Below, piece after piece: positions 3,608-56,069 of a DNA stretch of 64,000 nucleotides. Position numbers and translations under genes: made by a program. How positions within the stretch are numbered: the stretch's first letter is position 1; each line of letters begins with the position of its first letter. Source of the DNA: Malacoraja senta (taxonomy: Eukaryota); the NCBI GenBank assembly GCA_038087875.1, contig JAXLNO010002227.1, forward strand, positions 1-64,000, written 5' to 3'. The notes below the pieces were generated by a model that ran no database searches, was not told the DNA's origin, and worked only from the letters and a program-made list of their open reading frames with translations.

Positions 3608-3850
3608 TGAGCAAAAAAACAAGTATTGGAGGAACTCAGCAGGTATGGCAACATCTATGGAGGGAAATTGTCAGACAACGTCCTGGGTCAGGACCCGAAA
3701 AGCCATCTACCTGTTTCCCTCCACAGATGCTGCTTGACCCTCTGAGCTCCTCCAGCTGTTTTTGTTTTGCTCAAGATTCTAGCATCTGCAATATCTTGTG
3801 TGTCTATATAAAAGTTGATGTGCTTGTTCTAAATTTTCCTATATAGGTTT

Positions 3851-5374: not shown

Positions 5375-5464
5375 CTCCAATTTTCAGAGCCACTGCAGCT
5401 CAAATGGATTCAGCCTCATCAGTGCTAGCTCAGAACAGGACAACCCTTCAACAAGTGGCTGCAG
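5375..5464 (+). CDS. PER2: PER2 exon ([30 protein letters not shown])
   Basis: acag| ... |gtaggt; conserved [12 protein letters not shown]; phase 2/2. Confidence 0.88.
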
Positions 5465-7987: not shown

Positions 7988-8027
<40 letters not shown>

Positions 8028-17000: not shown

Positions 17001-20000
17001 CTCCTAGAAATGTTTGGTATCGCAGCTTAATGCGAGGCTGCATCTACGCAGACATCAGAAATGCAAGTTGAAAAAAAATTGTGCGTTTATTTTTATTGCA
17101 TATAAATCTCGTTAGAGTAATTTTTATTCTGTATCCCAGATTTTATGGGTCTCTATTTTAGTTTAGTTAGGATATACGGTCCTTAAATTTGTAATTTCAA
17201 TTCTCCAAACTGCAGTATCGTGGGGCTTTGTATTCATTTCGTATTTGTTCAGTAGGAATTACATTTATTTCTTTATTGATCTTTAATGATTATTAATTAA
17301 TGCTTATAATCAGACAATAACATGTAGGTGATGTTGTCCATCGATAAGCCTGAAATTGTTGCTCTTAAAACAAGTAGAAAGAGCCAATTAAATGAATATA
17401 GCTTTGTAGACAAATAAATATTTGCTCTTTGTAAAACTCTTAAGAATTACAAAGATGTCTGATCGTGAGTCATAGTGACTCTCTAAAGGATTTGCATTTG
17501 TATAGCGCCTTTTGGTGATCTCCAGATATTCCGAATTACTTTGAAATCAATTAAATTATTTTTAACGTGATGTATTGCAGGAAAAGTGTATTGTAGGAGA
17601 AGATAGCAGTTAGCTTTGCACAAAAGTGGCAGTGAGAAACATATGGAAATAATCTAGTTTAGTGATGTTGACTGAGCCAAAAAATGGCTGGGCACCTGTG
17701 TTATTCTTTGAAAAATGCAAGGAATCGTTTGCCAAGAGACATAGTTTTGCCTTTCCATGGGCATTTAAATTGAGATGGGCTCAATTTAAATGCCCATGGG
17801 AAGGTGTCTTTTGACTGTGAAGCTCTCCCTTACTAATGTATGGAAATGTTGTTTTAGATTACGTTAAAGGGTGGCACTTGGTTTTGAGAACATTTGGCTT
17901 TGAGACTCTAATGATACCACCGAAACAAGTTTGTCAGCTCCCATATAGAAAATGGAGCACTGGAGTTAATAATATTTTCATTTACTCTTTGAATGCAGTT
18001 GAAAATACTGCTTTAACAATTTTCTGCCATCATTAGTTCATTCAGCAGTTGGCCTAGTACATCCTGAATTCACTATCTAGTTTTTTTGTGACTCAAAAGC
18101 AGAGTCTGCTCTTGAGCAGTCATTAATTTTGGGAGGAAATCATTAACCTTTAGTCCCTTGTCTCTTTCTTTCAGATGGTGGTTTGGAAAGCTGGTAAAGA
18201 TCCCCACACAGGAAGAATTCGAGGACAGACAGAATTCAACAAAATAAAGAGTGAATCAAAGTGCAGACACAGAACTGGTAATAGACTTAATTATTTTGCA
18301 GTCATTATCTAGGCATATACGTAAATGATTTAAACAAATTCTGAGTGAAAAGCACCATGAGTCCAAGAATGACATTTGCCATTACAGCTGTGCTTGTTTC
18401 ATTCACTCTTATTCTGTGAATATGGACCTGATGTAGTCATTTGGATTTACATAGAAAACATCAATGTAAGGAACAATGTAAACATGTTGCTATTTGCCTT
18501 TAAATACTTTGGGACTACAATTTTACTTGAATATGTATACTTTTTCAATATTCAGTTCCTACCATTTTTGAGAACCAGATAAGAATAAGACGAAGGGAGT
18601 CTGGCTATAATACATCTAGCTTCATTTTGACTGAAGTATTTGAAAAGCCAATTTAAATAAATATGACCTGTTTTTTTTTTTAAATTAAGGGAAAACTAAC
18701 AAAAGACTTGATCTCTCCTTACTTCAGAATTTTACGCATTGTTCTCATTGTAGAAGGGCATATATTTTGCAGGAACACAAAAAGAGACAAGTAAACAGAC
18801 TAAAGATGTTAAAGCCAGCCCATCCAAGGGTACTGGAACAAGTAGTGCTGGAAAGAACATGCTCGTGGATGAACCAAGATGTGAGGAACATGCTGGATAT
18901 TGCTATCAGCAAATCAATTGTCTGGATAGTGTAATAAGGTGAGTGGCATTCTGGACCTGAACAAATGTATTTACCAAAACTACAAGGCTTTATTTGTTGA
19001 CCTGGATTTTATCATCAGTTGTGAAGTGACAACTCTCATGAATGGCCTTTAAGAAAGCAGCCACAGAGATACTTGGATCTCTGTGAAGTACATTTCATCT
19101 TTCCTAACATAGGTTGCTAACTGACACCAGCCAGCCCCAGTGACCTGGATCGATCCTGACCTTGGGTACCGTCTGCATGGAGTTTGGACGTTCTGCCTGA
19201 CACGACATGGGTTCTCTCCGGGTGCTCCGGTTTCCTCCCACATTCCAAAGACGTGCGAGTTTGCAGATTAATTGGCTTCTGTAAATTCCCCCCCCTTGTG
19301 TGCAGGATAGAACGAGGGTATGAGTGATCACTGGTCAGTTTGGACTCGGTGGCCCGAAGGGCCTGTTGCCGTGCTGCATCTTAAAACTAAAACCAGCTCC
19401 AGTAGAAATCTTGGGCTCAGCAATAGTAATGGCAACCAGCAGGCTGAGTACCCAGAGCTCAAACAAGAAAGTTTAAAATAAAACACAAGTTTTAATCAGC
19501 TTAAATATTGTAGCATGCGACGTAAAAGTTGAAACATACACATATTGAGCCTCCTTTGAATCATGGTAGTTGACTTTTCGGCAAATGTATCAATCCTTTT
19601 GCTCATGTGAAGGTGGCAGGTATATAGATTTGGATATCCTCTGCTATTTCAGTGTAAAAAATGCACGGCATCTTTTACATCCAAGGTTTATTGCTTTACC
19701 TGAAACAAGTCACGTTCGACAGTGTGGCACACTTTCAATGCCACACTGAAGCATCAACTATGTTCAGAAGTTAGCCTGATGGCCTGCTGAGTCGGGCGAG
19801 ACGGCACCATTGAGCCACATTGACCCTTTTGACTTGTAAGATCAGAAAATATTTGCTTCATCACTGTTTAAAACGCACATACACACTTTTGTCTTGTGCC
19901 CTTTTTAGATACACCAGAATACTGCTTTAAAGTTGAGAGAAAAATGATTAAATAATATGTCGAATGAGTCTGTTTCTCTCTTTTCTGTTACCTCGTTGAT

Positions 20001-23000
20001 TTTTGTTACTTTGGTATTTTTGCAGATATCTGGATAGCTACAATATTCCGTGGACTACAAAACGGAAGTGTGGTTCTTCATCGCCATCGGATGACGACAA
20101 ACGAAAAGTTGATATCGTGAATGATTGTAAAGGTATTTACCAAGTCTGAAATTGAGGTGTTTAGTTTTGTTTCAAATTACCTACCAAGCTACAGAATGTA
20201 CGGAACGTCTGACTTGATTCAAAGATTTAATCTGTATGGTGCCATGAGGTTTCTGAGGCTTATTAGCCTATCTTTATTGCTTTAAAAACAAACCCAGATG
20301 CTAGAAACAAAATGTTGGAGGTCACAGAATGTCACGCAGCATCTCTGAAGAAAGAAACAATTATTATTCCAGTTCTGATCAAGATCTGAAAAATTAACTC
20401 TGTTTCTATCTCCAAGAATGCTGCCTGATTTATTAAATATTTCCATTATTTAGTTTTGTATATATATATATATTTTTTTGCTCAACATATCTTAGTCATT
20501 TAGTAACCACTGAGTGTTTATCGAAAGCCAAATTCGGTATGTTTCACAAAGTCATCCATCGGAGATAAAGTATAAATGCGAGTATTTGACCTGCGGAATT
20601 GCTTTCCTTGTAGCTCCATTAAAGTCTGCAAAGAAGATGCCTTCTGGAGCAGTTGTTGGCACACTTCTGGCACCACGCGCCTTGCGAAGGAAGGCAGCGA
20701 GCGTCACCAGTCGAGGAAGTTACAGCAGCACCATTGTTCATGTGGGAGACAAGAAACCGCAGGCAGATGCAGGTACTGAAATTCACGTTCTAAAAGATCT
20801 CTCAAGAGGAGGTGCAAGTTGGTTAATACACGCACTGCAAGCATTTCTGTGAAGCTTCAATGTCCTGACCTGAGCATGGAAGGAGAAGAATATTGATTTT
20901 TAGTGACCAATAAATGCGATATTTAATAATTTCACAGCACCCACAACTTTTTTTTTTAGCACACTTGACGTAGCAAAATCATTTTGCAGTATCTCACAGG
21001 ATTAAAATGTCATTAATTGTAGGCCACATAAAGAGATGGTAGGGCCATAGCTCAGAAGCTTTGTCTAAAAGGTAGAGTTTGTGAAGGACACAGAGTGCTG
21101 GAGTAACTCGGCAGGTCAGGCAGACATGCTGAGTTACTCCAGCACTTTGTGTCCTTTTGTGTATAAACCAGCATTTGCAGCTCCTTGTTTCTAGATGTTG
21201 TGAACATGTTAAGTTAGGAAACTGGAATGGAGGTGGAGAGTTTTAGTTCCATGGGTTAGGGCCTTGGCAGCTGAACACATGGTCTTCCAACATGGAGCAA
21301 TGAAGCACCAAAATTAGAGGAGCATGGATTACTATGGAAAATATGCCAGAGGAGACTACAGAGGTGGAAAAGACTGTGTGGAAGAACTAAAGTTTTAAAT
21401 TTGAACTATTAGCGAGCCAGGTTCCAATGTAGATTATCAGGCACCGAGATGGTGAATGAACAGAACTTACTGTGATTTTAGCCCTGTGATGGCTATTTAG
21501 TGTGATTTATGGTTAAAAAAATGTAAGTTCTTGAGGCATAAGTAATTTGTATTTCCCAATTGAGGTGCCCTTCTGAAGAAACAATATTAGCTCCACAGGC
21601 TATACCACAATGTTTCTGAATGCTACTTATGTGTGTACACGCAACACGTGTATTTGTTTCCCCACTCCTATGCCCAGATGTGTGGTTGCTAATTCCAGCA
21701 ATGCTACCACGGTCAAACTCATGCCTGACCAACTGGAGCACTTGCTCATTAGGGGAGTTATTATGCCATTATAGTTGATGCACTTGCCTTCATGCAGAAA
21801 AAACACCCTCTTACGCATACAATTTTAAACTTAAAATCTTGACAGAAATCCTATTGGAGGATGGACTTGGCATTGCAGATCCAGCAGAGAACATGACATC
21901 TGCTACGCTGGTCACCACAGCATCTTCTGTGAACCTGGAAAAGGAAGCATTCAAGAAACTCGGTCTCACCAAAGAAGTTCTAGCTGCTCATACACAGAAA
22001 GAAGAGCAGATATTTTTGAGCAAGTTCAAGGAGTTGAGTAAACTAAAACCATTTGGAGCTACTTGCAAATCCTCTTTGCAATATCGGCACAAAGAATATT
22101 CAAGGGATCGTGGTAAGATTTTACAAATAAGGGTTTTTAAATTAATTTTACTTGTAAGCATACAAAATGTGTTGCTGTATATTATCTACGAGAAGAGGCA
22201 ATTGAGGATCAATGTACCATGTTTCATTTCGGGCTAAATTTAGCATATTATCCTATGGTTTTTGTTTTTGTTTTGTTAAATTCTCATGTAGCCTTGCCTG
22301 TTATAGTCATTCCAGTTGCCTTCATGGAACTTTTATAAACTGCTTCTTGGACGATCTGCCAATGTCTTGTCTCTGATTGCTAAAATAAGTTTGAATTGTG
22401 GAGAATCTTTGTTTGAGCTTCAATTTTAAACAGTTAATTTCAGGAGTTGTGGGACCAATATCTATGTCACTCCTTTCATCAACCTTTCAATATAAAAATG
22501 TCCAGAATAAGGTTAGAAGCAAATACTTACAAGTCCCATTTGTTTCCTTTGTAGCCTCTCGAGGATTTGCGTGGAACCGTGGAGAGCCCGGGCACAAAAA
22601 AAGCGGGAAGAATAGGAAGCCTAAAACGAAGCGCATCAAGCAGCAAGGATCATCTGATGGCGCGGCAAGCGGAAGAACCAATCATAGACTCCACCCTTGG
22701 CCCGCACCAATTACTGCACTCATACCTACCTACCAGCTGCCGATGTTTCCAACCCCTGGAGGCATGCCTTTTGCAGCTGACCCATCTCTGGCCAACTTTG
22801 CTGCTCAGGCTCTTCATTACAATCCTCAGACTCCACCATTTTCCGCGCCACTCGTATCCCCGCTGGTGGCAGTTGTGTTGCCCAATTACATCATGTCTCC
22901 GGGACCCGAGACGGCGCACCAGCCAATTTTTGCAAGTAAGCCGCCATTCCCTTCGCAACCAAACTTTTTACCTGCATGGAATTTATTCAAGGCTCCGCCA

Positions 23001-26000
23001 GCCTTTGCACCGCAGTATCGTGACCAGCCTGCACCAGGGAGTCAAGGGCAACAAGGCCACACTTCCCCTCCAAATTTCCATTCTAGGTCCATTTCACCTT
23101 TGCAGCTGAACCTTCTGGATGTGGGGCCCGGATCTACGAAAGCAATTGGACTTGTAGCTGGAAATGAATTAATGGCGGACCGAAGAGTAATGACAAGCAA
23201 CATGAACGGTACAAATGTGGGCACCATTGCAAAGGACGAAGCAGATCTTGTAAGTGGCGTACAAATTATAAACAATAATTGGATTAAATTTCTGAGAAAA
23301 ATAAATCGAGAAAATTGAGGACAGTGTAAATAGAATAAAGTCTCTGAGCTTTCCTTCTGGGCCCTCCCTGCATCTGATACATTTGTGCATGAATTGTGCC
23401 TGGCTGCCACTTCTACTAGGGGGATTTTGATGTGCGCCTGCTCACCCATAGATGTGAGCGCTTGTTTAGAAGAAGATATTCATCGTACTCCTGAGGTCTT
23501 CAGCATTAGCCAAGGGGACCACTCTGAGCTGGTCCCACTCCCAATCTGTGAGGTCCTGTTCTGGAAACAGATTTGAACTTGCCCACTCCTTCATTGTAAC
23601 CCTTTCATTCCCTCCCCTACCTGTTCCCGATCCAATTCACTCCCTCAATTCTAGCACCCATCCCCCATTGCCATCTTCCAACGACTCTACATTCAACCAC
23701 TAATCTATAGACCTGACACTTCCATGCCACTCACACCAACTGATCCCCTGGCTGTCAGCAATCGACTGCAATGGCGCATGATGCCAATTGCCCAGTCTCT
23801 AAAGCTCTTTGTCCCAGAATAAAGTGGGGAGAAAACATTGTGTCTGGAAAAACTCTTAAATGGGACAAGGATTTAAAATTGACCCATTTAAAAAAAAATG
23901 TCATCCATACTTCTCCATTATAATTTCCTGCGTTATTTTTAAATTGCATATGTTGCACCCTTTTTAATTCACTTCCTCCAACCCCCCCCTTCCCCGTACT
24001 TTGTTTTTTCATGGTGAGAAGATGAATAAGCAACAATGTTTAGACATTTGCCATTAACTTGTGGTCCATCGTATTGTCTCCTAGACAGTATTGTTAGCCT
24101 ACATTATCCTGACGATACACAAGACTGATACCCCATTACTCAGTAACGCCATGTGCTGTATACCATGTCCAAAATGTCTGTAGCAATTCTTTTATTTTTT
24201 TAATTCACTATGCAGCAATTTGACATTTTAATTAATAATATATTGCCTGTCTGGTGTGAACATATTGTATGGTTTTTTTTTGCTCTCTAAAGAATGAATC
24301 CCCTACTGAAGCCCAGAACAGTGACTCTCACTCCACTTCTACTGACATGCTGAAGCTGTTATTGCAGTCAGACGTCGGCTCTGCCGGCTCGGGGAGTATG
24401 GAATCGACAAGGTCCGGCTCCTCGGGCTCTCCGTCCAATGGTTGTGGAATGTCCGGAACTGACACAGGTAACTTTGTCCTTTTGTCTTAACCTAACCCAT
24501 AATGTAACACTAACAACTGTCTGAATTATCAGTGGATCTATTCTTTTTTTTTAAACAAAAGATCCATGTCGCCCATGGTTTTCTTTGCTTAAGAGCTTGT
24601 GTAAGTTAACTGATGGGTTGCTTTTGCTTGGGGTTGGGTGACAAAAATAAATAAACAGCACATTAGATCAGACCATCTATTGCTCTGGAAGGAGTTAACC
24701 TGTTTAATAGAATACATCTCCGACCATGGCAACACTCTGGCAATGGTTGGAGATGGCAAAGCATTTTCCAAGGCTCGTATGGTCCTTGAAAGTCCTGGAA
24801 TTTGAATCTGTTTTCAAGGCCTTAAGTCCTTGGATTTATCATGGGTCCTTGAAAGTCATTGAAATAGTGGAGACTTTGAAGCAGGCAGGGACAGTACAGG
24901 TTTGCAGGGACTCGTTGAAAAACAAAGTTTTCCATTATGGTTTCAGATTGAACAACCAAGAGATGAGTAAATGGACCATCAGTGCTCTATTGAAGTACGA
25001 ATATAGATAGGTTAACCATCTTGTGTGTAATTATTATGTAGTTTAGTGTCGTTCTCTGCAACCAGGACTAATGGATTGACTGATCACCTTCTCAGATTTC
25101 CCTGAAAATCAGTGTCTGTACATCAGAGCACACAAGTAACACAACAGAAAACAAGGTCTCAACTCCAAATTCCAATAGGCATTTGGCAATAATTCGAGCT
25201 ATATTCATGACTTCGAAGGAACTTTGAATTGAAAGTTGATTTTTCTGCTGTGCTTTTTGTACCAGAGGTGTGCAAAACATGATTTTCAATCAAATTTGAG
25301 ATGGAGACCAACCAACCTTCTTTCTTACTTTTATTTGGTACAGAATCAAATCATCCAATACGAAGCAATTTATATAAAAGTCTCCAATAAACCATCAATG
25401 TTTGCTGGATTTTGGTCCTTGAAGATTGGATTTTTGGACCTTAAGTCCTTAAAGTCCTCGAATTTAAAGCTGTTCCAAGTGTACAAACCCTGATATTCAC
25501 CAAAGACATGTGGGCTTGTACGTTAACTGGCCTTTGTAAACTTGCAGCTAATATGTAGGGAGTGGATGGGGAAGTGGAATACCGTGCAACTAGTATGTAC
25601 GGGTGATCAATGCTTGGCATGGACTCGGGCCAAAGGGCCTGTGAACATGCTGTATCTCCAAAATAAACCAAACCAGAAGGACTGCAACAGTTCCAGAAGG
25701 TGGCTCAAGTGGAGAGCCAAATAAAGTGAAAGGTGGAGAGCCTAATTCTCCAGATCAATTTGGGGGAGGCAATAGATGCTTATCTTGCCTTTGTTTTTCT
25801 TTGTTTGTCATGATTAGGTAGTAGCTGCTTGAGCAGCAGCAAATATTTTGGAAGCAACGACTCTGACAATGAAAAAATAGACGCGAGAACCATGATGACC
25901 TATCAACTACCATTCAGGTAAGTGCCCAAAATCCCAATTGTGTTGACTCCAACTTCAAAGGCTCTCCATATTGTTCTGTCTTAAGGCGAAAGAGTACCTA

Positions 26001-29000
26001 GGGAGAGGTTAAAGATCAATAAGGTCATGTACGCATCGAACCAAAGAAATGGGTGAGGTGTTCAATGAATATTTGCTGTTTGGCTTCACAATGTAGAAAG
26101 ACATAGAATCAGAATCACACTTTATTCGCCAAGTATGTTTTGCAACATACGAGGAATTTCATTGGCCAGGTCAGTCATACACTTAAAAGCAACAGATCAC
26201 TCAAAAACACATTTTAACATGAACATCCACCACAGTGACTCCTACACATTCCTAATTGGCGAAATACAAGTCCCTTCCCTTAGTTCTTCCTCGGTCTTGG
26301 GCCTCGAGCCCCCGTTGACGGGACGATCTTGACTCCCGTAGCCGGCGGCGTTCGGGCCCTCTGCGTCGAGGCGATCAGCTCCTGCATTGGGGGGGGTGTC
26401 AGCTCCCCCGCGCTGGGCGATCGAACTTCGCGTCGGGGTTGGTCGAACCTTCTGTGACGTTGGAGCTCCCGACCAGCCTCTCCCGACTGCAAGCTCTTGA
26501 TGGTAAAGTCTGCGGTGGGAGCGATCCCAGGCAAGGGATCAGCTCCGATGTTAAGTCCGCGCCCTGCGGTGGGGCTCACAGTCCGAGGAGGCTTCCAGCT
26601 CCAGCGATGGAAGGCCACAGAACACGCCGGAGAATGTGATCTGAAAATTAATCACATCTCGGGCAAGGTAGGAACTTGAAAAAAAAAATCACCCGATCCC
26701 CTCCCCCCTCCCCCACATAAAACAAACCGAAGAACATTCAAACAAACTTTAAACACTAAAAAATAACAAAAAGAATGGAAAAACGAACAGACTGCCGGCA
26801 GGGCAGCCATCGCCCTGGCGCCCCTGGTGGAAAGATGCTAGAGAGGTTAGTAATGATCTCTTCGAGAGATCTGCATTACAGAAGAGAAGGTGCCTGTGGT
26901 GTTAATACATACAAAAGAAGAAAAATCCCCGGGACCAGACCAAGTGTATCCTAGGACATGGTGGGAAGCAATTGGTAGCCACTGGCAGAAATATTTATAT
27001 CATTTGTATGGAGAGAGTTTTCAGTTATCGCTTGCTTCTGGGCTAGTCCCACATGGTTAGCTCACTTTCTATTCCTGTTGACTCCACAGAAATAAAAGTA
27101 AAGCCCATACAATAATAGGCAGGCAGACAATCAATGATGCCATCTGACCCGCCAAGGCCCATGTTCAACAAAGTCGTGGCTGCAGAAAGGAAAGAAGAAC
27201 AAGAAGTTTAGTTTAATGCAGGGAAAACCTACAGGGAGAATACTCAAAAGTATTCATTTTGAGGGTATGAGAATTGGAATTGCACTGACCAGAAAGAACG
27301 TATTTATAGTATGGCCTTGGTTCATGTTTTCTGGGCAGTGCTTCGAATACAATAAAACTTTGTTAATACAGCACAGTTGGAACTTGGTGCTAGATTGAGA
27401 TTTTTCTTTTGGATATCACTCTCATTATTACCTCAAAACACTTCACTTGTTTTGGATGTCACATAGTGGCATAATTTTTCCAGTGAACCCTGTGAGTTTT
27501 AAAAGGGAATTGGGAATCTGAAAGTAAAGAGAGCATGGGAGTCTGGGCCTGGTGAGCAATGATGTTGGTGAATCCAGGAATTAGATGGCAGGTTATCAGA
27601 GTTGCACTTCAATAGAATTTTTAATTCAATCTCCACTTTTCCCCTTGTGGTGAAGGTGCTTTTCCTTTCTGTAGTACGTCTCCTCGATTGCTAGCAGTTC
27701 TCTTATTACATTAACTTATTACACACTGGCATGTGGTTTAGCTGGTAGGTGGCTGGTAGTTTGTTCAACCATGGAGGACATCCAATCTAAGTCGAGTCTA
27801 GTTTTCATCCCACATGCACACTCAAGGCCAAGTTCACCAAATGACAATTAGTGGATGTATCTCTGAGCTATTTTGAAAGTTCTACTTCATTGCCCTCGAG
27901 GACCTCTCCATGTTTGTGGTGCTTCAGCCTTTGCCCTGGGTGAGATCAACTAATTATTTTAAGGTTCAAGGTTTGCGTCAGTAACACTATTCTGTCGGGG
28001 GACCTTACGGGATTTCTAATCCTGGCAGTGATTAAATAATTTAATCTCCGAGTCCAATTTTGTCCGAAGAGTAAAAGATGCCCAATTGTATTTACAAGGT
28101 AATAATCTAATTGCAAGACCTGTAATCTGATCTTTGGGTTTCAGATAATACAAAGATCCAGCATAACATTAAATAATTCATAGCCCTCTGAAATCTAAAG
28201 ACAAGAGAATCATTCTGCACTATCTATTTCATAATAAATTATATGTACTGTAGCTGTATGTCTGATTTCTGCACTACTTTTCAGCCAACATTAACCATTA
28301 AAGTTAATAACCCAGTCTTTGGCCCATGAAATAGAAACACTGCTGCATAAAAGGTCAATTTTATCTGGAATTTGATCCTGAGACCTTGTATCTCTGTGCC
28401 ATCAGTGGGCTTCCTGTTTCCAACTCTTTACGTTACTCGAGTAGCAGTCCATCTGCTACTGAAACGCTCATACAAATTAACTTTTCCTATGTCATCAGGA
28501 CAGCATTTCCCTCGACTCTTTTTAAACTGGGCTGCTCAAAGCTCTGGTGCCCATCTTTTAGCTTGCCGCTAGTTCTAATTACCCATCACCCTCAACCTTT
28601 TGACTTAAACTGATTCCTAACCCTAAGCAACAATCCTGAATTTAAGATGTGCTTAAGTGTGATTCCAGTATTTGAACATTTAATGTGTTCGTCTGCTTCC
28701 AATTCTCTTCAGGTTTATTCTTCACTTTATCTGGAGCATTAACTGATTGTTTTAAATGGGTTACACGGTCATTAAAATGAAAAATGCATTAACCACCATG
28801 CATGGATTGTGCAGTGAAATTCTAGTTCTGAGTGACTTTGCCTTACCTTGATACCAATCATTTTGTAGAGAGATGGCTGAGATTCATATGTCAAGCACAT
28901 GTATTGCTGATGTTTTTTTTATAATATTTATTATCTCCCAGTGCAGTATAATCAGCATGCCTTTCTTTCTTACAAATCAGGGACATTGTAACAGTTTTGA

Positions 29001-32000
29001 AGGAGGACAGGGTAAAGCTGAAAGTGTTGCAGAGAAACCAACCCAAATTCACAGAGAAACAAAGAAAAGAAATTGCTGAGGTCTTTAAAACGGGTGCAGC
29101 ACAAAAAACCATTGGCATCATGGTAAGTCCATTTTTAACTTCCTGAACTTGGCAGGAGAAATGAATTATATTTTCATGATAAAATCTGCACCCATTTTTA
29201 TCACATGCATTCCATATTACCTGATAAAGCTGCTGCTTGTATGGCTCAACAATATATTGCAAATCCTATTTCTTGAACATCATTGACTGCACCATGGGAA
29301 TTTTTAATAGCTCTGCTACAAACCAGCCTTTGTCTGCCCTGTGTTGGACTGCCAACAATGGGGTTAAATTAAAGGCCATGTTTTGCAATTGAGTATTGTT
29401 GTTTCCAAACTTATTTTATGTTTAAGATAGACATAAAATGCTGGAGTAACTCCGTGGGACTGGCAGCATCTGTGGAGAGAAGGAAAGGGGGACGTTTTGG
29501 GTCGAGACCCTTCTTCAGAACCCCCTTTTTAGCTTTCTCAACTGTATGAACTCTGTTTGACAATTTGAGTTGTGATCTAATCGCTCAATTTATATTATTG
29601 TCCCAAGTTTTAATATTATCCAAGTTTTAATATAATACTTCATTTGCACTCAGACGTGGATTAAATTTCAGAAATGAAAAGCTTCTTAAGCAGGTGGTTC
29701 TACAGTTTTTATAGGAGCACATACTCTGAAACTGAGGCAATTTCCCATAATAATAATGGCAGGATTTAATGTATATCCCCTACCTCCTTCCAAATAAATT
29801 CCAAATGAAGTAAAATGCATCAATCGTAGAAACTAATTATTTGAGTGATATAAAGCATGAAAAATGTTTTATATATTTGAACATTTCCAAACTTTTGGAA
29901 AAGTGGTGCAGTGTGAATGAATGCTGGAAATCTGAGCAAAAAGAGAAATTTGTGGAAACTCAACTTAAGAGTTTAGTTTAGAGATGCACCGTGGAAACAG
30001 GCCCTTTGTCCCACCGAGTCCGTGCCGACCAATGATCACCCATACACTAGATCTATCCTACACACATAGGGACAATTTTGGAGAAGCCAATTAACCTACA
30101 AACCAGCACGTCCTTGGAATGTGCAAAAAAAAATCACACGGTCGCAGGTAGAACTTACAAACTTCTTACAGATAGCACCCGATGTCGGGATCGAACCTGA
30201 GTCCCTGGCGCTGTAAGGCAGCAGTTCTGCCGTTGCGCCATTGTGCTGCCCCTTGTGGAGAAAGAAATTAGTGCTTTATGTTTCAGGTCAATGTTGTTTT
30301 ATCAAGAATTTAGGTCTTGATGCTCCACAAACACAGATCGATTGTGCGTAGTCTCTCCTCTCTGCCTTAAGCTTCACACCTCTCCCCTTCTGCACTTTAA
30401 GGTCTAATAGCTCTCTTCTTAAAAGTTGTGATGAATGATTCATAGCCTAAAATATTAGTTCTAGATGCTGCCTAAATCGCGTTGCACCAACATTTTAATT
30501 TACTCCCACACATTTGTAAAACACACAAATTGTCTTGTTCCACACAAATTGTAGAACACTCACAAATACGAAGATAGACACAAAATGCTGGAGTAACTCA
30601 GCGGGTTAGGCAGCATCTCTGGAGAGAAGGAATGGGTGACATTACGGGTTGAGACCCTCCTTACAAACACGACATTTGTGTTTGGGTCTGCTTATGTGAC
30701 ACCCATGAAGCAGTAAAAATCGCCCACAGTATGAATATTTCAACTGAAGTGTCTGAACATAAATTTGAACCAAACCAGCGTGCAACATTTACCATTGTGA
30801 TGGGGGGGGGGGGGGGGGTTCATCCATAAAGAAAATACAACAAGCCTGCTCTGCAAGAGCAATAAAACTGACAGCACTCTGATCTGTTTTGTATTTAAAT
30901 ATCCTCAAGCTGTTATTTTAAGAATCCGAGACTTTGCAGTGCTCTTTGTGAATCACCCATTAAAAGCAAGTTGGGATCAATTCCCAACTTCTTGTTTGAA
31001 ATGCCATAAAATTTAAAGTGTGCAGAATTTATTATAGCATTCTATATTTATTATATAATTTATTATAGCATATAGGTATGCAAGTAAAACTAAACACCTT
31101 TTTATACCAAGACAAATTTGACCTGTCCCCTTGTGACACATCACTGAAGAAAACTAAATGGTAATAATAAATGTGGACTAGGAATTTTGTCATGAGTGGA
31201 CTGGGCTCTCAATTTAATGTAATTGTTTATTAACAAAATAAAAATTCGAAAAATTGGAAAACTTGTATGAAACTGGAAAATTACTTTCATTTCAACAATT
31301 ACAAATAAAATATAAACTCGGAAATAATCAATATTTTAAATATTTTCAAATATGCGACTATTTGAAAAAAATACAAAAGATAATAACCCAGTAGATGTAT
31401 TGGACGAGGCAATGCAGATAAAAGCGGAATCAGCAAACTTAATATCATATTTGTATAATATTATCTTAAATGTACAAATACCACCTACGGAGGGTATCAG
31501 AAGAGACTGGGAACAAGAGTTAGCTATTAAAATTTCAAAGGAAAGTTGGAATGAATACATATTAAACGTGCATAAATGCTCGATTAATGTAAGACACACT
31601 TTAATACAATTTAAAATTTTACATAGATTATATTATTCAAAAACTAAAATTCATAAAATTTTCCCAAATGTATCATCTATTTGTGATAAATGTCAATCCC
31701 AAGAAGCTACTATAGCACACTCATTCGTTTTCTGTACAAAAATTCAAAAATTTTGGAATGAAATTTTTGAAATCTTTACAAAGTTATTTAAAACAAGACT
31801 GATACCCAAAGCAGAATGGATTATCTTCGGTATAACGGAAGATGGTCCAGAACTAAATGTGTTTCAAAAGAAACTAATGGACTATGGGTTAATAATTGGA
31901 AAAAAGCTAATTCTAAAATTTTGGAAGAAGGCTCCAATACCAACTATAAATATGTGGATTTCAAATATGTTTGAAACATTACACCTAGAAGAGATAAGAC

Positions 32001-33467
32001 TCCTCCTAGCAGGTAAACCAGATCACTTCCACCTGACGTGGTCTGCATTTATAGAATTATCAGGTAAGGGGGGATGATAGTTGAAGAGTTGGTATGTCCC
32101 ATTTACGTAATGCTCATAAAAATATCTGTTTCTCTCTTTTTCCTCTTTCTCTCTCTCTCTTTCTTTCCTAGGGTCTATTTCTTAACTCTTTTTCTTTTGT
32201 TTTTAATTTTGCTCTTATAGGGTCTTCGTCCTTTTTTGTTGTCACATTTCCTACACTTTCACTTTTTCCTTCACTTTCTTCTTTCTTTCAATCTTTTCCT
32301 TTTCTACTGTAAAAAATAAATGGAGTACATTAATTGTAAGAAGATATAAATGATGAGTACTAATGTATGTGGTTGTAATGTAATGTACTTCTAATAAATA
32401 AAAATTAAAAAAAAATAATAATAATTGGAAAATGCATTTAGTGCACATATATATAATTGGGGAGTAGGGAGATGATCAAATAAAGCTGTGATAACTTCCA
32501 ATAAGCATTGGACTTTACAAAGCAACCATTATAATTGTCTGAAGAAGGGTCTTGACCCTTAACGTCACCCATTCCTTCTCTCCAGAGATGCTGCCTGACC
32601 TGCGGAGTTACTCCAGCATTTTGTGTCTACCTTAGATTTAAACCAGCATCTGCAGTTCTCTCCTACACATAATTGTCTGCCTGTTGAATCTTTTCATTCA
32701 CAGCTTTCCTGCAGCATTTAGTTCAGTATTGTACAATTGGTAAAATAAATAGCCGCCGGGTCTGCAACTTTTTGGCAGACAAGAAAATTAATTATTAAGG
32801 TTAGACTCCGGTCAGCATCCTGGATAAGCGATGTTTCGGGTCGGATCGGGACTCTTTTTCAGACTGAAATGTCACCTATCCACGTTCTCTAGGGGCGCTG
32901 CCTGACCCACTGAGTAACTCCAGTATGTTCTGTCATTCCTTGGTAAACCAGCAGCTGCAGTTCTTTGTTTCCACAAATCAAATGTTAACATGGACAATTG
33001 GCTTTCATGTTTTAACTGAATATAGACTTAGAATCAGCATGTTTTATTGTGATTCCTTTTGAGGCTAATGTTGGCTATAATTAAAAAAAATGACAACTAA
33101 TTTTGGGATTGTTCCTTATGACTCATAAAAATTAGAATGGTAAGAATAAAATGGAAATAATATATGACACTGCTTGTACTCTTAATGATTTTGTTTTTAT
33201 GGAAGGTGTGGAATTTGTCGTGTATATATTTGATTGTAATTCTTCTTAATTTAGGATAGAATCTTCTCTGAGAAAAATGCATCACAGAACATTTTGTCAG
33301 CATTGGATATGGAAATCCATAATCTGGAGTTTAGTGGACTGAATGAGCCAGGACACGATGTTGGCTTTCAGGCCACGAACATTGCAAATGAAGGGCAAAA
33401 CCCTTCAGAAAATGCAGACCCCAACCTGGCAGTAGAAACAAACACATTTGGAAACTCTGCAAGTTGA
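5375..33467 (+). CDS. PER2: Period circadian protein homolog 2, multi-exon gene span (21 coding exons in window, equivalent to mammalian exons 3-23; 5'-partial)
   Basis: Manually spliced exons total 3472 nt (1+3471), with all intron phases compatible, all GT-AG and no internal stop. PER motifs include [101 protein letters not shown] and MMTYQLP. PER2-type CK1BD-B/NLS and adjacency to HES6 support PER2. Confidence 0.93.
6567..6700. repeat. Penelope-related palindromic repeat arm with intact minimal hammerhead core (6665-6692, - strand)
   Basis: rc: CTGAAGA-A-GGGTCTCGACCC-GAAA-CGTC. Confidence 0.6.
7126..7325. mobile_element. PIF/Harbinger-like MITE
   Basis: TIRs AGGGCCTGTCC…GGACAGGCCCT flanked by TTA target-site duplication (7123-7125, 7326-7328). 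Confidence 0.8.
7664..7818 (+). CDS. PER2: PER2 exon ([16 protein letters not shown]...[13 protein letters not shown])
   Basis: gcag| ... |gtaggc; conserved PER N-terminal helix. Confidence 0.93.
7991..8023. repeat. (GA)n microsatellite
   Basis: Direct reading. Confidence 0.95.
8479..8600 (+). CDS. PER2: PER2 exon ([11 protein letters not shown]...SEYTSKNA)
   Basis: gcag| ... |gtaagt; ANEEYY motif. Confidence 0.93.
8810..9200 (-). mobile_element. Ancient Deu-domain SINE (SacSINE1-like) relic
   Basis: Degenerate L2-type tail and Deu-like segment; similar relics at ~17485-17960 and ~19620-19830. Confidence 0.45.
9360..9560. repeat. Palindromic (inverted-arm) Penelope-related repeat
   Basis: …GCTGGAGTAACTCAGCGGG…/…CCCGCTGAGTTACTCCAGC… arms; the family also occurs at ~21087, 29428, 30575, 32538, 40175, 43977, 45145, 45313, 47595, 48052, 48545, 49640, 59970, 60720, 61387. 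Confidence 0.8.
9704..9905 (+). CDS. PER2: PER2 exon, PAS-A ([21 protein letters not shown]...[10 protein letters not shown])
   Basis: acag| ... |gtgagt; PAS-A homology. Confidence 0.94.
11344..11890 (-). mobile_element. CR1 LINE 3' fragment
   Basis: ORF 11552..11905: [28 protein letters not shown]…[10 protein letters not shown] plus CR1 3'UTR. Confidence 0.9.
12388..12442. repeat. 28-bp tandem duplication
   Basis: GCCTCAGCAGTCGAAGATGTGGTTTCT twice. Confidence 0.9.
12721..12772 (+). CDS. PER2: PER2 exon ([18 protein letters not shown])
   Basis: ttcag| ... |gtgagt; EKSFFCRI motif. Confidence 0.93.
14350..14492 (+). CDS. PER2: PER2 exon ([20 protein letters not shown]...[15 protein letters not shown])
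   Basis: acag| ... |gtgaga; AERVHSGYE motif. Confidence 0.94.
14768..14957. repeat. Palindromic Penelope-related repeat (long hairpin)
   Basis: ~65-bp inverted arms. Confidence 0.8.
15221..15299 (+). CDS. PER2: PER2 exon, PAS-B start ([27 protein letters not shown])
   Basis: atcag| ... |gtatgt. Confidence 0.94.
15643..15749 (+). CDS. PER2: PER2 exon, PAS-B ([14 protein letters not shown]...PLMLSIHKK)
   Basis: acag| ... |gtaagt. Confidence 0.95.
15924..16077 (+). CDS. PER2: PER2 exon, PAS-B/PAC ([13 protein letters not shown]...[19 protein letters not shown])
   Basis: ttcag| ... |gtaagt; dimer-interface Trp (NPWSRK) intact. Confidence 0.95.
16584..16692 (+). CDS. PER2: PER2 exon (GPLNEDVF...[11 protein letters not shown])
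   Basis: gtag| ... |gtaaaa. Confidence 0.94.
16796..16927 (+). CDS. PER2: PER2 exon with beta-TrCP phosphodegron ([13 protein letters not shown]...HKP)
   Basis: ttag| ... |gtaagt; SSGYGS at 16814-16831. Confidence 0.93.
17750..17804. repeat. 25-bp inverted repeat with 5-nt loop
   Basis: CCTTTCCATGGGCATTTAAATTGAG-ATGGG-CTCAATTTAAATGCCCATGGGAAGG. Confidence 0.95.
18175..18277 (+). CDS. PER2: PER2 exon ([21 protein letters not shown]...RHRT), divergent
   Basis: Strong polypyrimidine tract + cag|, |gtaata; phase 0/1 bridges the neighbouring exons; weak similarity to the PER 'TFQQICKDVH..GQQ.F' exon. Confidence 0.8.
18773..18938 (+). CDS. PER2: PER2 exon, CK1-binding domain A (…[15 protein letters not shown])
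   Basis: ttgcag| ... |gtgagt; phase 1/2. Confidence 0.9.
19138..19392 (+). mobile_element. HE1-like SINE (5'-truncated)
   Basis: Family consensus body and tail. Confidence 0.8.
20026..20132 (+). CDS. PER2: PER2 exon ([27 protein letters not shown]...)
   Basis: gcag| ... |gtattt; TKRKC motif. Confidence 0.92.
20614..20772 (+). CDS. PER2: PER2 exon with FASP region (…[29 protein letters not shown])
   Basis: gtag| ... |gtactg; [15 protein letters not shown] motif. Confidence 0.93.
21846..22112 (+). CDS. PER2: PER2 exon, CK1-binding domain B ([27 protein letters not shown])
   Basis: acag| ... |gtaaga; ORF 21839..22237. Confidence 0.95.
22555..23249 (+). CDS. PER2: PER2 large exon: NLS, proline-rich region, SPLQLNLL
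   Basis: gtag| ... |gtaagt; ORF 22398..23318. Confidence 0.93.
24293..24467 (+). CDS. PER2: PER2 exon ([25 protein letters not shown]...SG-rich)
   Basis: aaag| ... |gtaact; LKLLL = LxxLL. Confidence 0.92.
25818..25917 (+). CDS. PER2: PER2 exon, shortened CRY-binding-domain exon ([34 protein letters not shown])
   Basis: ttag| ... |gtaagt; SKYFGS and MMTYQLP anchors; 100 nt, phase 1/2. Confidence 0.92.
26105..26830 (-). mobile_element. Non-autonomous GC-rich element with (GATTCT)n tail, inserted in a CR1 ORF2 relic (~26040-27000)
   Basis: Shares its 5' head motif with the 2611-3465 element; flanks encode EMGEVFNEY… and [12 protein letters not shown]. Confidence 0.65.
28981..29122 (+). CDS. 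PER2: PER2 exon ([47 protein letters not shown])
   Basis: atcag| ... |gtaagt; VLKEDR.KL and QP.FTE.Q..E motifs; phase 2/0. Confidence 0.93.
29969..30253 (-). mobile_element. HE1-like SINE
   Basis: Family consensus. Confidence 0.8.
31262..32422 (+). mobile_element. 5'-truncated L1/Tx1-clade LINE (ORF2 C-terminus with Cys-rich zf-RVT region, 3'UTR, A-rich tail)
   Basis: ORF 31352..32077 ([11 protein letters not shown]…CDKC…HSFVFC…FW); AATAAA + A-tail; candidate TSD AATTGGAAAA at 31252-31261 and 32423-32432. Confidence 0.88.
33255..33467 (+). CDS. PER2: PER2 terminal coding exon ([31 protein letters not shown]...GNSAS*)
   Basis: ttag| acceptor, phase 0, 70 open codons to TGA, followed by an AT-rich UTR-like sequence; positional similarity to the PER2 tail (ECVYCEN...). 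Confidence 0.8.
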   Translation, partial: DRIFSEKNASQNILSALDMEIHNLEFSGLNEPGHDVGFQATNIANEGQNPSENADPNLAVETNTFGNSAS

Positions 33468-34573
33468 GGTCTTTATCATGTACAAACGGACACATGCTTT
33501 CTTGGTATGAATGCACAGAGCTCTTTGGGAGTTGATGAAAATTTCATCTCACCTTAAGTCGAAGAAATTACAGTTTGAAGATTTTTTGGAAAAAAACCGT
33601 TGTTATTTAATAGCATAAATTGTGTTGCGTCAGGTTGAACTACTTATGACTATCTACAGTTCTTTTAATGTACATGTTCATGGAATCCAGTATTATTATA
33701 TCTGATATTCTTGGAATCTTTCAAAGTATCAATGTCTGTTGTAAATGAATCGGCATTTTTCAATAATCTAGCCATAAAATTAATTTTATAGTCACTTGAT
33801 GCTTGTTCATTTCAGCTTCTAGATAAATATCCATGTGGAGGTTTGTAATCCAATTTACAAAGTTTCCACTGCCAGTATAGTTTTGTTGTCACATTCATTA
33901 GGACAGACAATTTAACAGAATGTTCCACTGTGTGGAGATGTACACAAGAGATTTTTTTTTTTAATAGGTTATAATAATAATTATAAGTTCAAACAAAATG
34001 CATGCAGATTGCTGGACCTAGCATTTCAGCTATTCACTCTAACTCATTCTAAATTGTGGACACCAATTTGAATATGTACTAAGATTGGAACTTTAACATT
34101 TTTGGTGTATTCCAATCAGATCCAAAGTCCAGAAATGTAAACACTGATGAATGGAAGCTAATCTTTGTGATTTTGGATGAAAGCAATAAACAGAGAGCAT
34201 TAGAAATATAAAAATAAACCAACAAAGCTGTTTAGAGATCATTTGTCCCGATTTTAGAGTTATCATAAGGTCCAGTTCATTAAATCCTCTACATTAAAGC
34301 TATTTTTTAATGAAAGGCAGTGATGCAATTGCTGGGTGTCAAAGGCAAAGTAACAGATCTTGATTATGCACAGTGTCTCTTGACAAAACATACAATGTTC
34401 TCAACTTCTCAGTATGTCTTTTTTTAAAGTTGTTTCTCACAAACCGCCCTATTTGTCAGTTCTGTGGCTCCTCTGTTTTTGTAATTGTTAAGACTGTAGA
34501 AAATGCAATTTCGTTCAAACCAAGCTGTTTGAATGACGATAAAAGGCATTCTATTCATAAAGTGTAAATTACA

Positions 34574-55611: not shown

Positions 55612-56069
55612 TTACCACGGCCTCCAGACCGACTTGGAGTACATTGCAGGGGATGTGTTCTCTGTCCGACAGCTGTCTACCACTTTATCTTGCAGCAAGG
55701 GTGCCGGTGCAGCAGTGGACGGGTCCGCGTCGTCCAGATCGGAGCAGGCATCATCGCTGGAGGCAGAGGATACAGGAGACAGTGCCGGGGAGCAGAGCTG
55801 TTCTCTACCTCCGGGGGACGCCAATAACAGGCACATATCGTCAGGCCCAGACCATATACTGGAGCTACTCTCAGCCATCAACTCGCCCAGTAAATCCTGA
55901 AAGTGGTCTTCGCTCAGTGGCATGGACTCCAGGAGGTGGTTCAGTAAATCGGCGGCTACGGCAGAATCGATCCCCGGACAGTTTGAAACGAAAGTGTGGA
56001 CCTCGTGCATGCACTGGATGTAGCCGGCTGCAAACCTCTCATTCGCTTCCTCGTTAAACCTATCCTGTT
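55612..56069 (-). CDS. HES6: HES6 exon 4 (Orange domain, WRPW)
   Basis: gcag|AA CAG GAT…; ORF 55612..56079 ending WRPW*. Confidence 0.96.

What the first reader, a model, noticed from the sequence alone, without database searches (positions are those of the whole stretch)
25818..33467. An intact-frame PER2 whose cryptochrome-binding domain is selectively dismantled: a possible CRY-uncoupled clock protein
Seen in sequence: all 21 exons splice in frame with canonical sites. PAS-A/B (including NPWSRK), CK1BD-A/B, the SSGYGS degron, the NLS and the LxxLL are conserved. Yet each of the three exons encoding the C-terminal CRY-binding domain carries its own lesion: a ~31-aa deletion, a 3-aa deletion and loss of both zinc cysteines. 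Established knowledge: this domain wraps around CRY1/2, shields CRY from FBXL3, and forms an intermolecular zinc site; it is among the most conserved parts of vertebrate PER1/PER2. Inference: frame-preserving erosion concentrated in one module points to loss of the PER2-CRY interaction with retention of another role. Possible roles are a PAS/CK1 scaffold, a nuclear-receptor coregulator, a light-input transducer or a dominant modulator of PER1/PER3. That would mean a rewired negative limb of the clock in this lineage.
Basis: partly seen in the sequence, partly recalled or inferred. Interest (0 to 1): 0.9.

Follow-up and report, generated by a model that had tools for sequence, protein, structure and literature searches.

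The report
Skate PER2 with eroded CRY-binding tail
This is the working clock gene PER2 of a skate; its tail, which in other vertebrates grips the partner protein cryptochrome, was cut back step by step during ray and skate evolution and furthest in this species, so the two proteins may couple weakly or differently here.

Summary
The window carries coding exons 2-22 of a skate PER2: 21 exons, all GT-AG, one open frame of 1,154 codons. The ATG exon lies just upstream of the window. HES6 lies downstream, and the protein falls in the PER2 clade.

All three lesions in the cryptochrome-binding domain (CBD) are real, and no alternative exon supplies the missing motifs. They are not all specific to this genome:
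- The first zinc cysteine is absent in every cartilaginous fish examined. Most rays have neither cysteine.
- The 31-residue gap is two nested deletions: 12 residues shared by the three non-skate ray lineages examined and the skates, and 19 more in all five skates. Two of those skates are assembled transcripts.
- Only the 9-bp deletion of the F/S-P-W motif and six substitutions in the same exon are private to this species.

Selection is relaxed most in the C-terminal module. CBD omega rises from 0.16 to 0.55 in skates (p=0.005). PAS stays at about 0.15-0.18.

The central clamp, which mouse mutagenesis shows is needed for CRY binding, keeps 18 of 20 strongly conserved positions. My reading is a pared-down, zinc-free and probably weakened PER-CRY interface. 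A CRY-free PER2 is not shown.

The scan found this before on another piece of the same genome (s1-195516), with a similar conclusion.

The parts
5375..33467 (+). PER2 gene body in the window: coding exons 2-22 (21 exons). The ATG exon lies upstream of position 1.
   Evidence: Exons: 5375-5464, 7664-7818, 8479-8600, 9704-9905, 12721-12772, 14350-14492, 15221-15299, 15643-15749, 15924-16077, 16584-16692, 16796-16927, 18175-18277, 18773-18938, 20026-20132, 20614-20772, 21846-22112, 22564-23249, 24293-24467, 25818-25917, 28981-29122, 33255-33467. All are AG/GT, giving one ORF of 1,154 codons. Pfam bHLH_PER, PAS-A and PAS_3 hit window exons. The protein falls in the PER2 clade with 100/100 support.
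25818..25917 (+). CBD exon 1 (coding exon 20), 100 nt. It lacks 31 codons that encode the alpha1 helix and the Trp1139 anchor.
   Evidence: PDB alignment to mouse PER2 CBD skips chain residues of about 29-57 (6of7_B) or 23-51 (4u8h_B). Exon length is 193/190/157/100 nt in Heptranchias/Rhincodon/Narcine/skates. Alignment.
25867..25880 (+). The two in-frame deletion junctions inside exon 20. The older 12-codon one is at about 25867/25868 and the skate-wide 19-codon one at 25879/25880. Positions depend on the alignment.
   Evidence: Protein alignment and codon coordinates.
28981..29122 (+). CBD exon 2 (coding exon 21), 142 nt instead of 151. It encodes the central clamp (alpha3, loop) and the remnant of the HPW...LP...ID segment.
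   Evidence: Matches mouse PER2 CBD in 4u8h/4ct0/6of7 at E of about 1e-9 and Pfam Period_C positions 117-155 at 44 bits. It has 6 nonsynonymous and 0 synonymous changes on this species' branch.
29083..29084 (+). Junction of the species-specific 9-bp deletion that removes F/S-P-W (mouse H1193-P1194-W1195).
   Evidence: DNA alignment of six species.
29114..29116 (+). Asp to Gly at the position of mouse Asp1206, the salt bridge to CRY2 Lys503.
   Evidence: GAC to GGC on the window branch. The role of Asp1206 is from PMC4157330. This column is N or D in bony vertebrates.
28988..29014 (+). Two Glu to Val changes (codons at 28988 and 29012) in the RD.E.VLKEDRE.LK helix, private to this species.
   Evidence: alignment.
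33255..33467 (+). Last coding exon. The CxxC position reads R-I-F-S (33258-33269). The acidic tail carries the conserved D.EIH.LE motif. The stop codon is at 33465-33467.
   Evidence: No PDB or Pfam hit on its own. It is 91-92% identical to the skate transcripts.
33468..34533 (+). 3' UTR
   Evidence: Transcript L002 aligns on to 34533 at 91.6% identity.
55615..56121 (-). Neighbouring HES6-like gene (Orange-domain exon), the PER2 synteny marker.
   Evidence: Pfam Hairy_orange at 1.1e-14. The identification as HES6, and PER2-HES6 adjacency in human, are from my own knowledge.

Best explanation
This is a functional skate PER2 ortholog under selection. Its cryptochrome-binding domain has been reduced in steps.

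Step 1, in the cartilaginous-fish ancestor or earlier: the first cysteine of the CxxC zinc clasp was lost. Most rays and the galeomorph sharks then also lost the second.

Step 2, by the common ancestor of the rays examined: a 12-residue deletion ahead of the alpha1 helix, with the helix itself degraded.

Step 3, skate stem: a further 19-residue deletion removed the whole alpha1 helix. This helix carries the Trp anchor that in mouse sits beside the CRY serine loop and secondary pocket.

Step 4, this species only: loss of the F/S-P-W motif, Asp to Gly at the Asp1206 position, two Glu to Val changes and Pro-Pro to Ala-Gln, all in one exon that now diverges at the intron rate.

What remains is the central clamp that embraces the CRY C-terminal helix.

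Inferred mechanism: skate PER2 still docks on CRY through this clamp, but more weakly and without zinc. It would not reshape the CRY serine loop, so it no longer tunes CRY's affinity for CLOCK:BMAL1. Its PAS, CK1-binding, degron and nuclear-import functions would continue unchanged. In this species the residual interface is under little or no constraint.

Shown: the anatomy, the phylogenetic order of the lesions, expression of the shortened exon in two other skates, and the selection pattern. Inferred: everything about binding strength.
For: - Intact 21-exon frame with canonical splice sites.
- PER2 clade with 100/100 support, and a Hairy_orange gene downstream.
- Order of lesions across 20 cartilaginous-fish PER2 proteins.
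- Exon 20 is 193, 157 and 100 nt; exon 21 is 151 nt everywhere but 142 nt here.
- The 100-nt exon is spliced into mRNA-length contigs from two skate sequencing runs.
- CBD profile score falls stepwise: bony vertebrates 196-229 bits, chimaera and sharks 173-198, other rays 125-150, other skates 92-104, window 79.
- The central module keeps 18 of 20 strongly conserved columns, against 1 of 11 for alpha1, 2 of 6 for HPW-LP and 0 of 2 for CxxC.
- CBD omega is 0.20 on the skate stem and 0.15 for Rhinoraja against Narcine. The clamp therefore stayed constrained for most of the time since skates split from other rays.
- PAS omega on the window branch is 0.13, different from 1 at p=0.0027.
- In mouse, alanine blocks in the N-terminal half of the CBD did not stop CRY1 binding, whereas blocks in the C-terminal half did. 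Charge substitutions at residues 1171-1174 did the same for CRY2. Deleting CxxC weakened binding but did not abolish it (PMC4157330).
- The alpha1 end of the CBD contacts the serine loop, and PER2 CBD binding remodels that loop and tunes CRY affinity for CLOCK:BMAL1 (PMC4157330; PMC7064333).
Against: - Within skates the retained CBD evolves at omega 0.55, not significantly below 1 (p=0.094). CBD plus tail is 0.80 (p=0.41). The clamp may already be dispensable.
- On this species' branch the CBD exons carry 8 of 33 nonsynonymous changes in 7% of the coding length (p=0.0016). Exon 21 diverges from Amblyraja as fast as its introns: 7.0% against 5.3-6.6%.
- Several weakening changes combined may abolish binding even if each alone does not.
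- No binding data or complex model could be made here.
- The skate CRY partner residues were not examined.
Confidence: 0.5

Rival explanations
1. CRY-uncoupled PER2. In this species, and perhaps in all skates, the tail no longer binds CRY at all. PER2 is kept for its PAS, CK1 and other functions.
For: - Trp1139 helix, zinc ligands and the P-W motif are all absent, and the Asp1206 position is Gly.
- C-terminal module omega is 0.80 in skates, not different from 1. Window-branch CBD omega is 0.92.
- Exon 21 diverges at the intron rate.
- CBD profile score is the lowest of all 30 sequences scored.
Against: - The clamp segment that is necessary for binding in mouse is retained at 18 of 20 strongly conserved columns.
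- It was constrained on the skate stem, omega 0.20.
- Pfam Period_C still matches it at 44 bits.
- Mouse mutants lacking the N-terminal-half motifs or CxxC still bind CRY.
- Divergence within skates is too small (dS 0.09-0.25) to separate omega 0.5 from 1.
Confidence: 0.3
2. Adaptive re-tuning. The cluster of changes in exon 21 is positive selection for a new partner or a new binding mode, not decay.
For: 6 nonsynonymous and 0 synonymous changes plus an in-frame deletion in 142 nt on one short branch (binomial p=0.002). Tail omega is above 1 in crown skates.
Against: ML omega for the window-branch CBD is 0.92, not above 1. Exon divergence equals the intron divergence. The changes remove residues that are conserved elsewhere and do not create a recognisable motif.
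Confidence: 0.08
3. General decay of PER2 in this species, that is, early pseudogenisation.
For: Whole-gene omega is higher in skates (about 0.44-0.59 pairwise) than in sharks (0.21). The window branch has 33 nonsynonymous and 15 synonymous changes.
Against: No stop or frameshift in 21 exons, and all splice sites are canonical. PAS omega on this branch is 0.13, p=0.0027 against neutrality. The rest of the gene in skates is far below 1, p=6e-20.
Confidence: 0.05
4. Assembly or consensus error produced the species-specific lesions (the 9-bp deletion and neighbouring substitutions).
For: They are seen in only this one window. Reads were not available.
Against: The deletion is in frame. Flanking introns align to Amblyraja and Rhinoraja at normal divergence. 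There are no N runs. An earlier scan note reports an eroded CBD on another piece of the same genome (s1-195516, not verified by me). The two older lesions are seen in five independent skate sources.
Confidence: 0.05

Closest known systems
Mammalian PER2 CRY-binding domain as solved with CRY1/CRY2 (PDB 4CT0, 4U8H, 6OF7)
   Same: The central segment (R-D-I[32 protein letters not shown]) aligns without gaps to mouse residues of about 1155-1193 at E of about 1e-9. It keeps Asp1167 and the hydrophobic 1171-1174 patch.
   Different: It lacks the alpha1 helix with Trp1139, the H-P-W motif, Asp1206 and both zinc cysteines. Nangle et al. call the zinc finger strictly conserved in vertebrates. It is not conserved in cartilaginous fishes.
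PER2 of other skates (Amblyraja radiata XP_032886980.1, Rhinoraja longicauda, two transcript assemblies)
   Same: Same 22-exon layout, same 100-nt exon 20 without alpha1, no cysteine at the CxxC position, 91% protein identity to Amblyraja.
   Different: They keep F/S-P-W, Pro-Pro, Asp at the 1206 position and both Glu residues. Their CBD profile scores are 92-104 bits against 79 here.
Shark and chimaera PER2
   Same: Orthologs. They already lack the first zinc cysteine (L or P instead), and they share the FASP segment that is one SxxS unit shorter.
   Different: They retain a full alpha1 helix with the Trp and the F-P-W or H-P-W motif. CBD omega is 0.14 in sharks.
Mammalian PER3
   Same: A PER paralogue whose alpha1 region has also diverged: ESIWRMI in place of DPIWLLMA in the PER3 sequences retrieved.
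   Different: PER3 keeps the Trp, H-P/S-W and CxxC. The skate protein is in the PER2 clade, not the PER3 clade.

Membership tests
Vertebrate PER2 (orthology group) | bHLH-like region, PAS-A, PAS-B/PAC | tested here: met
   Pfam bHLH_PER 71 bits and PAS-A 101 and 41 bits on window exons. PAS_3 (25.0 and 20.7 bits) and PAS_11 (22.4 bits) on the single PAS-B exon pieces fall just under Pfam's cut-offs of 25.6 and 25.
Vertebrate PER2 (orthology group) | Groups with PER2, not PER1 or PER3, in a family tree | tested here: met
   Cartilaginous-fish sequences, including the window, are sister to bony-vertebrate PER2 with 100/100 support. The PER1 and PER3 clades are separate.
Vertebrate PER2 (orthology group) | Conserved neighbour HES6 | tested here: met
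   Hairy_orange exon on the minus strand at 55615-56121. The assignment to HES6 specifically, and its adjacency to PER2 in human, are from my own knowledge.
Vertebrate PER2 (orthology group) | CK1-binding motifs, SSGYGS degron, FASP serine cluster | tested here: met
   Visible in the spliced translation. The FASP cluster is one SxxS unit shorter than the human one (as I recall it) in all cartilaginous fishes aligned.
Vertebrate PER2 (orthology group) | Full-length Period_C / CRY-binding domain | tested here: not met
   Only Period_C profile positions 117-155 of 171 match, at 44 bits. The shark protein matches 1-169 at 206 bits.
PER-CRY complex with intermolecular CCCH zinc finger (Nangle 2014, Schmalen 2014 type) | PER CxxC ligands (mouse C1210, C1213) | tested here: not met
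   R-I-F-S at 33258-33269. The first Cys is absent in all 20 cartilaginous-fish PER2 proteins seen.
PER-CRY complex with intermolecular CCCH zinc finger (Nangle 2014, Schmalen 2014 type) | CRY Cys/His ligands (CRY1 C414/H473) present in the partner | not testable with these tools
PER-CRY complex with intermolecular CCCH zinc finger (Nangle 2014, Schmalen 2014 type) | alpha1 helix with Trp1139 inserted beside the CRY serine loop | tested here: not met
   Deleted in all skates. No other frame of the window encodes it.
PER-CRY complex with intermolecular CCCH zinc finger (Nangle 2014, Schmalen 2014 type) | [quoted passage not shown] | tested here: met
   K-E-D, L-K-V-L and Q-R-N-Q-P-K-F-T-E are retained. 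18 of 20 strongly conserved columns are kept.
PER-CRY complex with intermolecular CCCH zinc finger (Nangle 2014, Schmalen 2014 type) | Physical binding to CRY | not testable with these tools
   No multimer modelling or experiment was available.
Pseudogene | Stops, frameshifts, broken splice sites, or omega of about 1 over the whole gene | tested here: not met
   None in 21 exons. PAS omega is 0.13 on this branch. The rest of the gene in skates has omega 0.44, p=6e-20 against 1.

The most novel reading that the evidence does not exclude
Cartilaginous fishes may run the clock with a single PER, the PER2 type. Its CRY interface never had, or lost early, the canonical zinc clasp. Skates have in addition removed the serine-loop anchor. 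On this reading, in skates and most of all in this species, PER and CRY are only loosely coupled or uncoupled. CRY stability and CLOCK:BMAL1 repression would then be organised differently from the textbook vertebrate negative limb.
Probability: 0.2. Interest if true: 0.85.

Novelty: new variant of a known kind. Interest (0 to 1): 0.6.

Why it matters
The PER-CRY complex is the core repressor of the vertebrate clock. Its zinc clasp and Trp anchor are described as strictly or highly conserved in vertebrates (PMC4157330). This work gives a natural deletion series:
- sharks and chimaeras: first zinc cysteine gone;
- rays: alpha1 helix shortened and the zinc motif further degraded (no cysteine except in sawfish);
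- skates: helix gone;
- this skate: P-W motif and Asp gone.

The rest of the protein stays under purifying selection throughout. That makes it possible to test which parts of the interface are really needed for CRY binding, CRY protection from FBXL3, and tuning of CRY affinity for CLOCK:BMAL1. The proteins to compare already exist in nature.

If cartilaginous fishes really have only this one PER, the consequences for their clock would be larger. I found no paper describing this.

Tried and rejected
1. Hidden or alternative exons for the missing motifs. A motif scan in six frames and sensitive tblastn with shark, ray, gar and chimaera tails found none. The one weak hit (59667-59720, minus strand, E=1.1) lies beyond HES6 and is noise.

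2. Assembly gap. The window has no N.

3. The missing ATG exon as a lesion. Rejected: window 1-5400 is colinear with Amblyraja intron 1, so the exon lies just upstream of the window.

4. Looking for the window's own annotated protein or further skates. The third homology search returned only the same two skate clusters. My E-value cut-off of 1e-40 also hid any paralogues.

5. Looking for cartilaginous-fish PER1/PER3.
   - The coelacanth PER1 query was swamped by bony vertebrates: 1,019 hits, 120 shown, none cartilaginous.
   - Every PER-family representative over 800 residues was labelled. Only PER2 came from cartilaginous fishes; one representative carried no name.
   - A published table lists Callorhinchus as Per1=0, Per2=1, Per3=0.
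   - This is suggestive, not proof.

6. Coding sequences for more species. Hemitrygon and Hemiscyllium returned no DNA. Pristis, Stegostoma and Cetorhinus were not on record. Rhincodon has an N run after one exon, which I left as three masked codons.

7. Literature on elasmobranch clock proteins. Four searches found nothing specific.

8. Structure prediction was not run. The CBD has no fold of its own, and complexes cannot be modelled with the tools given.
Full report
**What is in the window.**

Six-frame reading shows a vertebrate Period gene on the plus strand. Two mRNA-length contigs assembled from skate sequencing runs align to the window as 21 blocks at about 85-99% identity. These are L001 (4,029 nt, SRR5172149) and L002 (4,955 nt, SRR13269326). 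Choosing the GT/AG pair that keeps the transcript coordinate continuous gives exons from 5375 to 33467. They join into a single open frame of 1,154 codons with one terminal stop.

The first coding exon (82 codons, with the ATG) is absent from the window. In the Amblyraja radiata locus it lies 8.8 kb upstream of exon 2. Window 1-5400 is colinear with that intron, starting about 1.4 kb after the exon. The exon is therefore outside the window, not lost.

Pfam finds bHLH_PER, PAS-A and PAS_3 on window exons; the PAS-B exon pieces score just under Pfam's cut-off when scanned singly. A Hairy_orange exon lies downstream on the other strand. From my own knowledge that gene is HES6, the neighbour of PER2 in human. 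In a tree of 25 PER proteins the window groups with Amblyraja. All cartilaginous-fish sequences are sister to bony-vertebrate PER2 with 100/100 support, apart from PER1 and PER3. Earlier notes of this scan say the genome is a skate. By coding-sequence identity it is about 95% identical to Amblyraja and 92% to Rhinoraja.

**The three lesions are real.**

- The middle exon matches the mouse PER2 CRY-binding domain in 4U8H, 4CT0 and 6OF7 at E of about 1e-9. It matches Pfam Period_C positions 117-155.
- The first exon aligns to the mouse chain in two pieces and skips about 29 residues between them.
- The last exon has no PDB or Pfam match.

Using the numbering fixed by C1210/C1213, D1206 and D1167 in Nangle et al. 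(PMC4157330), the missing stretch includes the helix around Trp1139. A 9-bp deletion between 29083 and 29084 removes the codons equivalent to H1193-P1194-W1195. The CxxC position reads R-I-F-S. No other frame or strand of the window encodes the missing motifs. The window has no N.

**The lesions have different ages.**

I collected PER2 from one chimaera, eleven shark entries (ten species), four non-skate rays and four other skate sources.

- *Zinc motif.*
  - Bony vertebrates and lamprey have a cysteine at the first position.
  - Every cartilaginous fish has L, A, P, N, K or R there.
  - The second cysteine survives only in Callorhinchus, Heptranchias, Pristiophorus, Heterodontus and Pristis.
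- *alpha1 helix.*
  - It is full length in chimaera and sharks.
  - It is 12 residues shorter and degraded in stingrays, sawfish and Narcine.
  - It is absent in all five skates, by a further 19-residue deletion.
  - The exon is 193, 190, 157 and 100 nt in Heptranchias, Rhincodon, Narcine and skates.
  - The 100-nt exon is spliced into both skate transcripts, so the shortened mRNA is expressed in those species.
- *Private to this species.*
  - The F/S-P-W deletion.
  - Two Glu to Val changes, Met to Leu and Pro-Pro to Ala-Gln.
  - Asp to Gly at the Asp1206 position.

A profile built from 142 bony-vertebrate PER1/PER2 domains scores as follows:

| Group | Bits |
|---|---|
| Bony controls | 196-229 |
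| Chimaera and sharks | 173-198 |
| Other rays | 125-150 |
| Other skates | 92-104 |
| Window | 79 |

**What remains.**

There are 52 columns conserved at 90% or more in bony vertebrates. The window's retention by module is:

| Module | Retained |
|---|---|
| Central module | 18 of 20 |
| alpha1 | 1 of 11 |
| H-P-W...L-P segment | 2 of 6 |
| CxxC | 0 of 2 |

By my hand alignment it also keeps 8 of 13 in the S-K-Y-F-G-S flank, which hmmalign left unaligned. Asp1167 and the hydrophobic patch at 1171-1174 are present.

Nangle et al. report the following for mouse:
- Alanine blocks in the N-terminal half did not stop CRY1 binding.
- Blocks around the loop after alpha3 did stop it, and charge substitutions at 1171-1174 stopped CRY2 binding.
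- Removing CxxC compromised binding but did not abolish it.

The alpha1 end of the CBD sits against the CRY serine loop (PMC4157330). Fribourgh et al. show that PER2 CBD binding remodels that loop and tunes CRY affinity for CLOCK:BMAL1 (PMC7064333).

**Selection.**

I recovered coding sequences for the window, the two transcripts, Amblyraja, Rhinoraja, Narcine, Heptranchias and Rhincodon. I aligned them by codon and fitted a Goldman-Yang type model with branch classes on the fixed tree.

| Region | Omega outside skates | Omega in skates | p |
|---|---|---|---|
| N-terminus | 0.26 | 0.31 | 0.56 |
| PAS | 0.15 | 0.18 | 0.51 |
| Middle / CK1-binding | 0.36 | 0.51 | 0.08 |
| Pro-rich linker | 0.48 | 0.69 | 0.046 |
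| Retained CBD columns | 0.16 | 0.55 | 0.005 |
| Tail | 0.50 | 1.53 | 0.027 |
| CBD plus tail | 0.28 | 0.80 | 0.0008 |
| Everything else | 0.31 | 0.44 | 0.003 |

In skates, CBD plus tail is not distinguishable from 1 (p=0.41). Everything else is far below 1 (p=6e-20). Relaxation is thus about three-fold in the C-terminal module and about 1.4-fold elsewhere.

Within the CBD, omega by branch class is 0.20 on the skate stem, 0.53 in crown skates and 0.92 on the window branch. Pairwise Nei-Gojobori values agree: CBD 0.14 between the two sharks, 0.15 for Rhinoraja against Narcine, 0.35-0.57 among other skates, and 0.82 for window against Amblyraja.

On the window's own branch, parsimony gives 33 nonsynonymous and 15 synonymous changes. 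Six nonsynonymous and no synonymous changes fall in exon 21 (binomial p=0.002). Eight fall in exons 20-21 (p=0.0016). Exon 21 differs from Amblyraja by 7.0%, and its alignable flanking intron by 5.3-6.6%. PAS on the same branch has omega 0.13, p=0.0027 against neutrality.

The gene is therefore alive. The clamp was constrained for most of the time since skates split from other rays, and constraint on it has weakened in living skates, most of all here.

**Interpretation.**

The best reading is a stepwise pared-down PER-CRY interface. It is zinc-free, has no serine-loop anchor, and is left with the central clamp. I expect weaker CRY binding and loss of the tuning of CRY for CLOCK:BMAL1, while the PAS, CK1, degron and import functions go on.

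It is not excluded, above all for this species, and I give it about 0.3. General pseudogenisation, an assembly artefact and adaptive re-tuning are less likely, for the reasons given under the rival explanations.

**Other PER genes.**

I could not find PER1 or PER3 from any cartilaginous fish. Every PER-family representative over 800 residues returned by the exhaustive PAS-A search was labelled. Only the elasmobranch and Callorhinchus PER2 clusters came from this class; one representative carried no name. A supplementary table of PMC11457068 lists Callorhinchus as Per1=0, Per2=1, Per3=0. This is weak negative evidence, because 50% clustering, capped lists and my own E-value cut-off could each hide such proteins.

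**Earlier notes of this scan.**

- Finding s1-195516, on another piece of the same genome, described the same kind of PER2. Its follow-up concluded 'slimmed-down PER-CRY interface, not a CRY-free PER2'.
  - My independent analysis agrees.
  - It adds the phylogenetic order of the lesions, the species-specific second wave, and the selection tests.
- Its note on a shortened FASP serine cluster (s1-200040) describes a state shared by all cartilaginous fishes aligned.
- I found no publication describing any of this.

Noticed in passing
window 20614-20772 (coding exon 16): The FASP serine cluster reads [10 protein letters not shown]. That is one SxxS unit shorter than the human S-V-A-S-L-T-S-Q-C-S-Y-S-S (human sequence from memory). 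All skates, Narcine and Heptranchias have the same short form, so it looks class-wide and not a lesion of this gene.
   Followed up: partly
window 55615-56121, minus strand: Orange-domain exon of a HES6-like gene (Pfam Hairy_orange, 1.1e-14). It is convergent with PER2, as in human.
   Followed up: partly
window 31340-32074, plus strand (last PER2 intron): 245-codon open frame with a weak zf-RVT match (22.9 bits, under Pfam's cut-off). It is probably the C-terminal end of a LINE ORF2 inserted in the intron.
   Followed up: no
window 61727-62709, plus strand: Two overlapping open frames with RVT_1 matches: a reverse-transcriptase remnant of a LINE broken by a frameshift.
   Followed up: no
window 2610-3490: GC-rich stretch (about 48% GC against about 39% around it) inside PER2 intron 1. 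It has no counterpart in the colinear Amblyraja intron. It may be an insertion or a lineage-specific CpG-rich element.
   Followed up: no
window, many places (e.g. 9381-9605, 14725-15006, 29373-29557, 48529-48950): A short interspersed repeat occurs on both strands. Its translations recur as C-W-S-N-S-A-G and A-E-L-L-Q-H-F-V-S. Copies are also seen in Amblyraja intron 1.
   Followed up: no
L006 54803-55202 (Rhincodon typus PER2 locus): An N run directly follows one exon. The annotated whale-shark PER2 therefore lacks the FASP segment. This is an annotation gap, not biology, and I left the Ns untouched.
   Followed up: partly
window 33255-33467 and relatives: After the degenerate CxxC position, a tail motif D-x-E-I-H-x-L-E is conserved from lamprey and gar to skates. 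Its function is unknown to me. The rest of the tail has omega above 1 in crown skates.
   Followed up: partly
L003 (Amblyraja) against L001/L002: The annotated Amblyraja PER2 is 8 residues longer (1,247 against 1,239) than the two transcript-derived skate proteins. The difference lies in the region of coding exons 13-14 and is probably an alternative acceptor.
   Followed up: no
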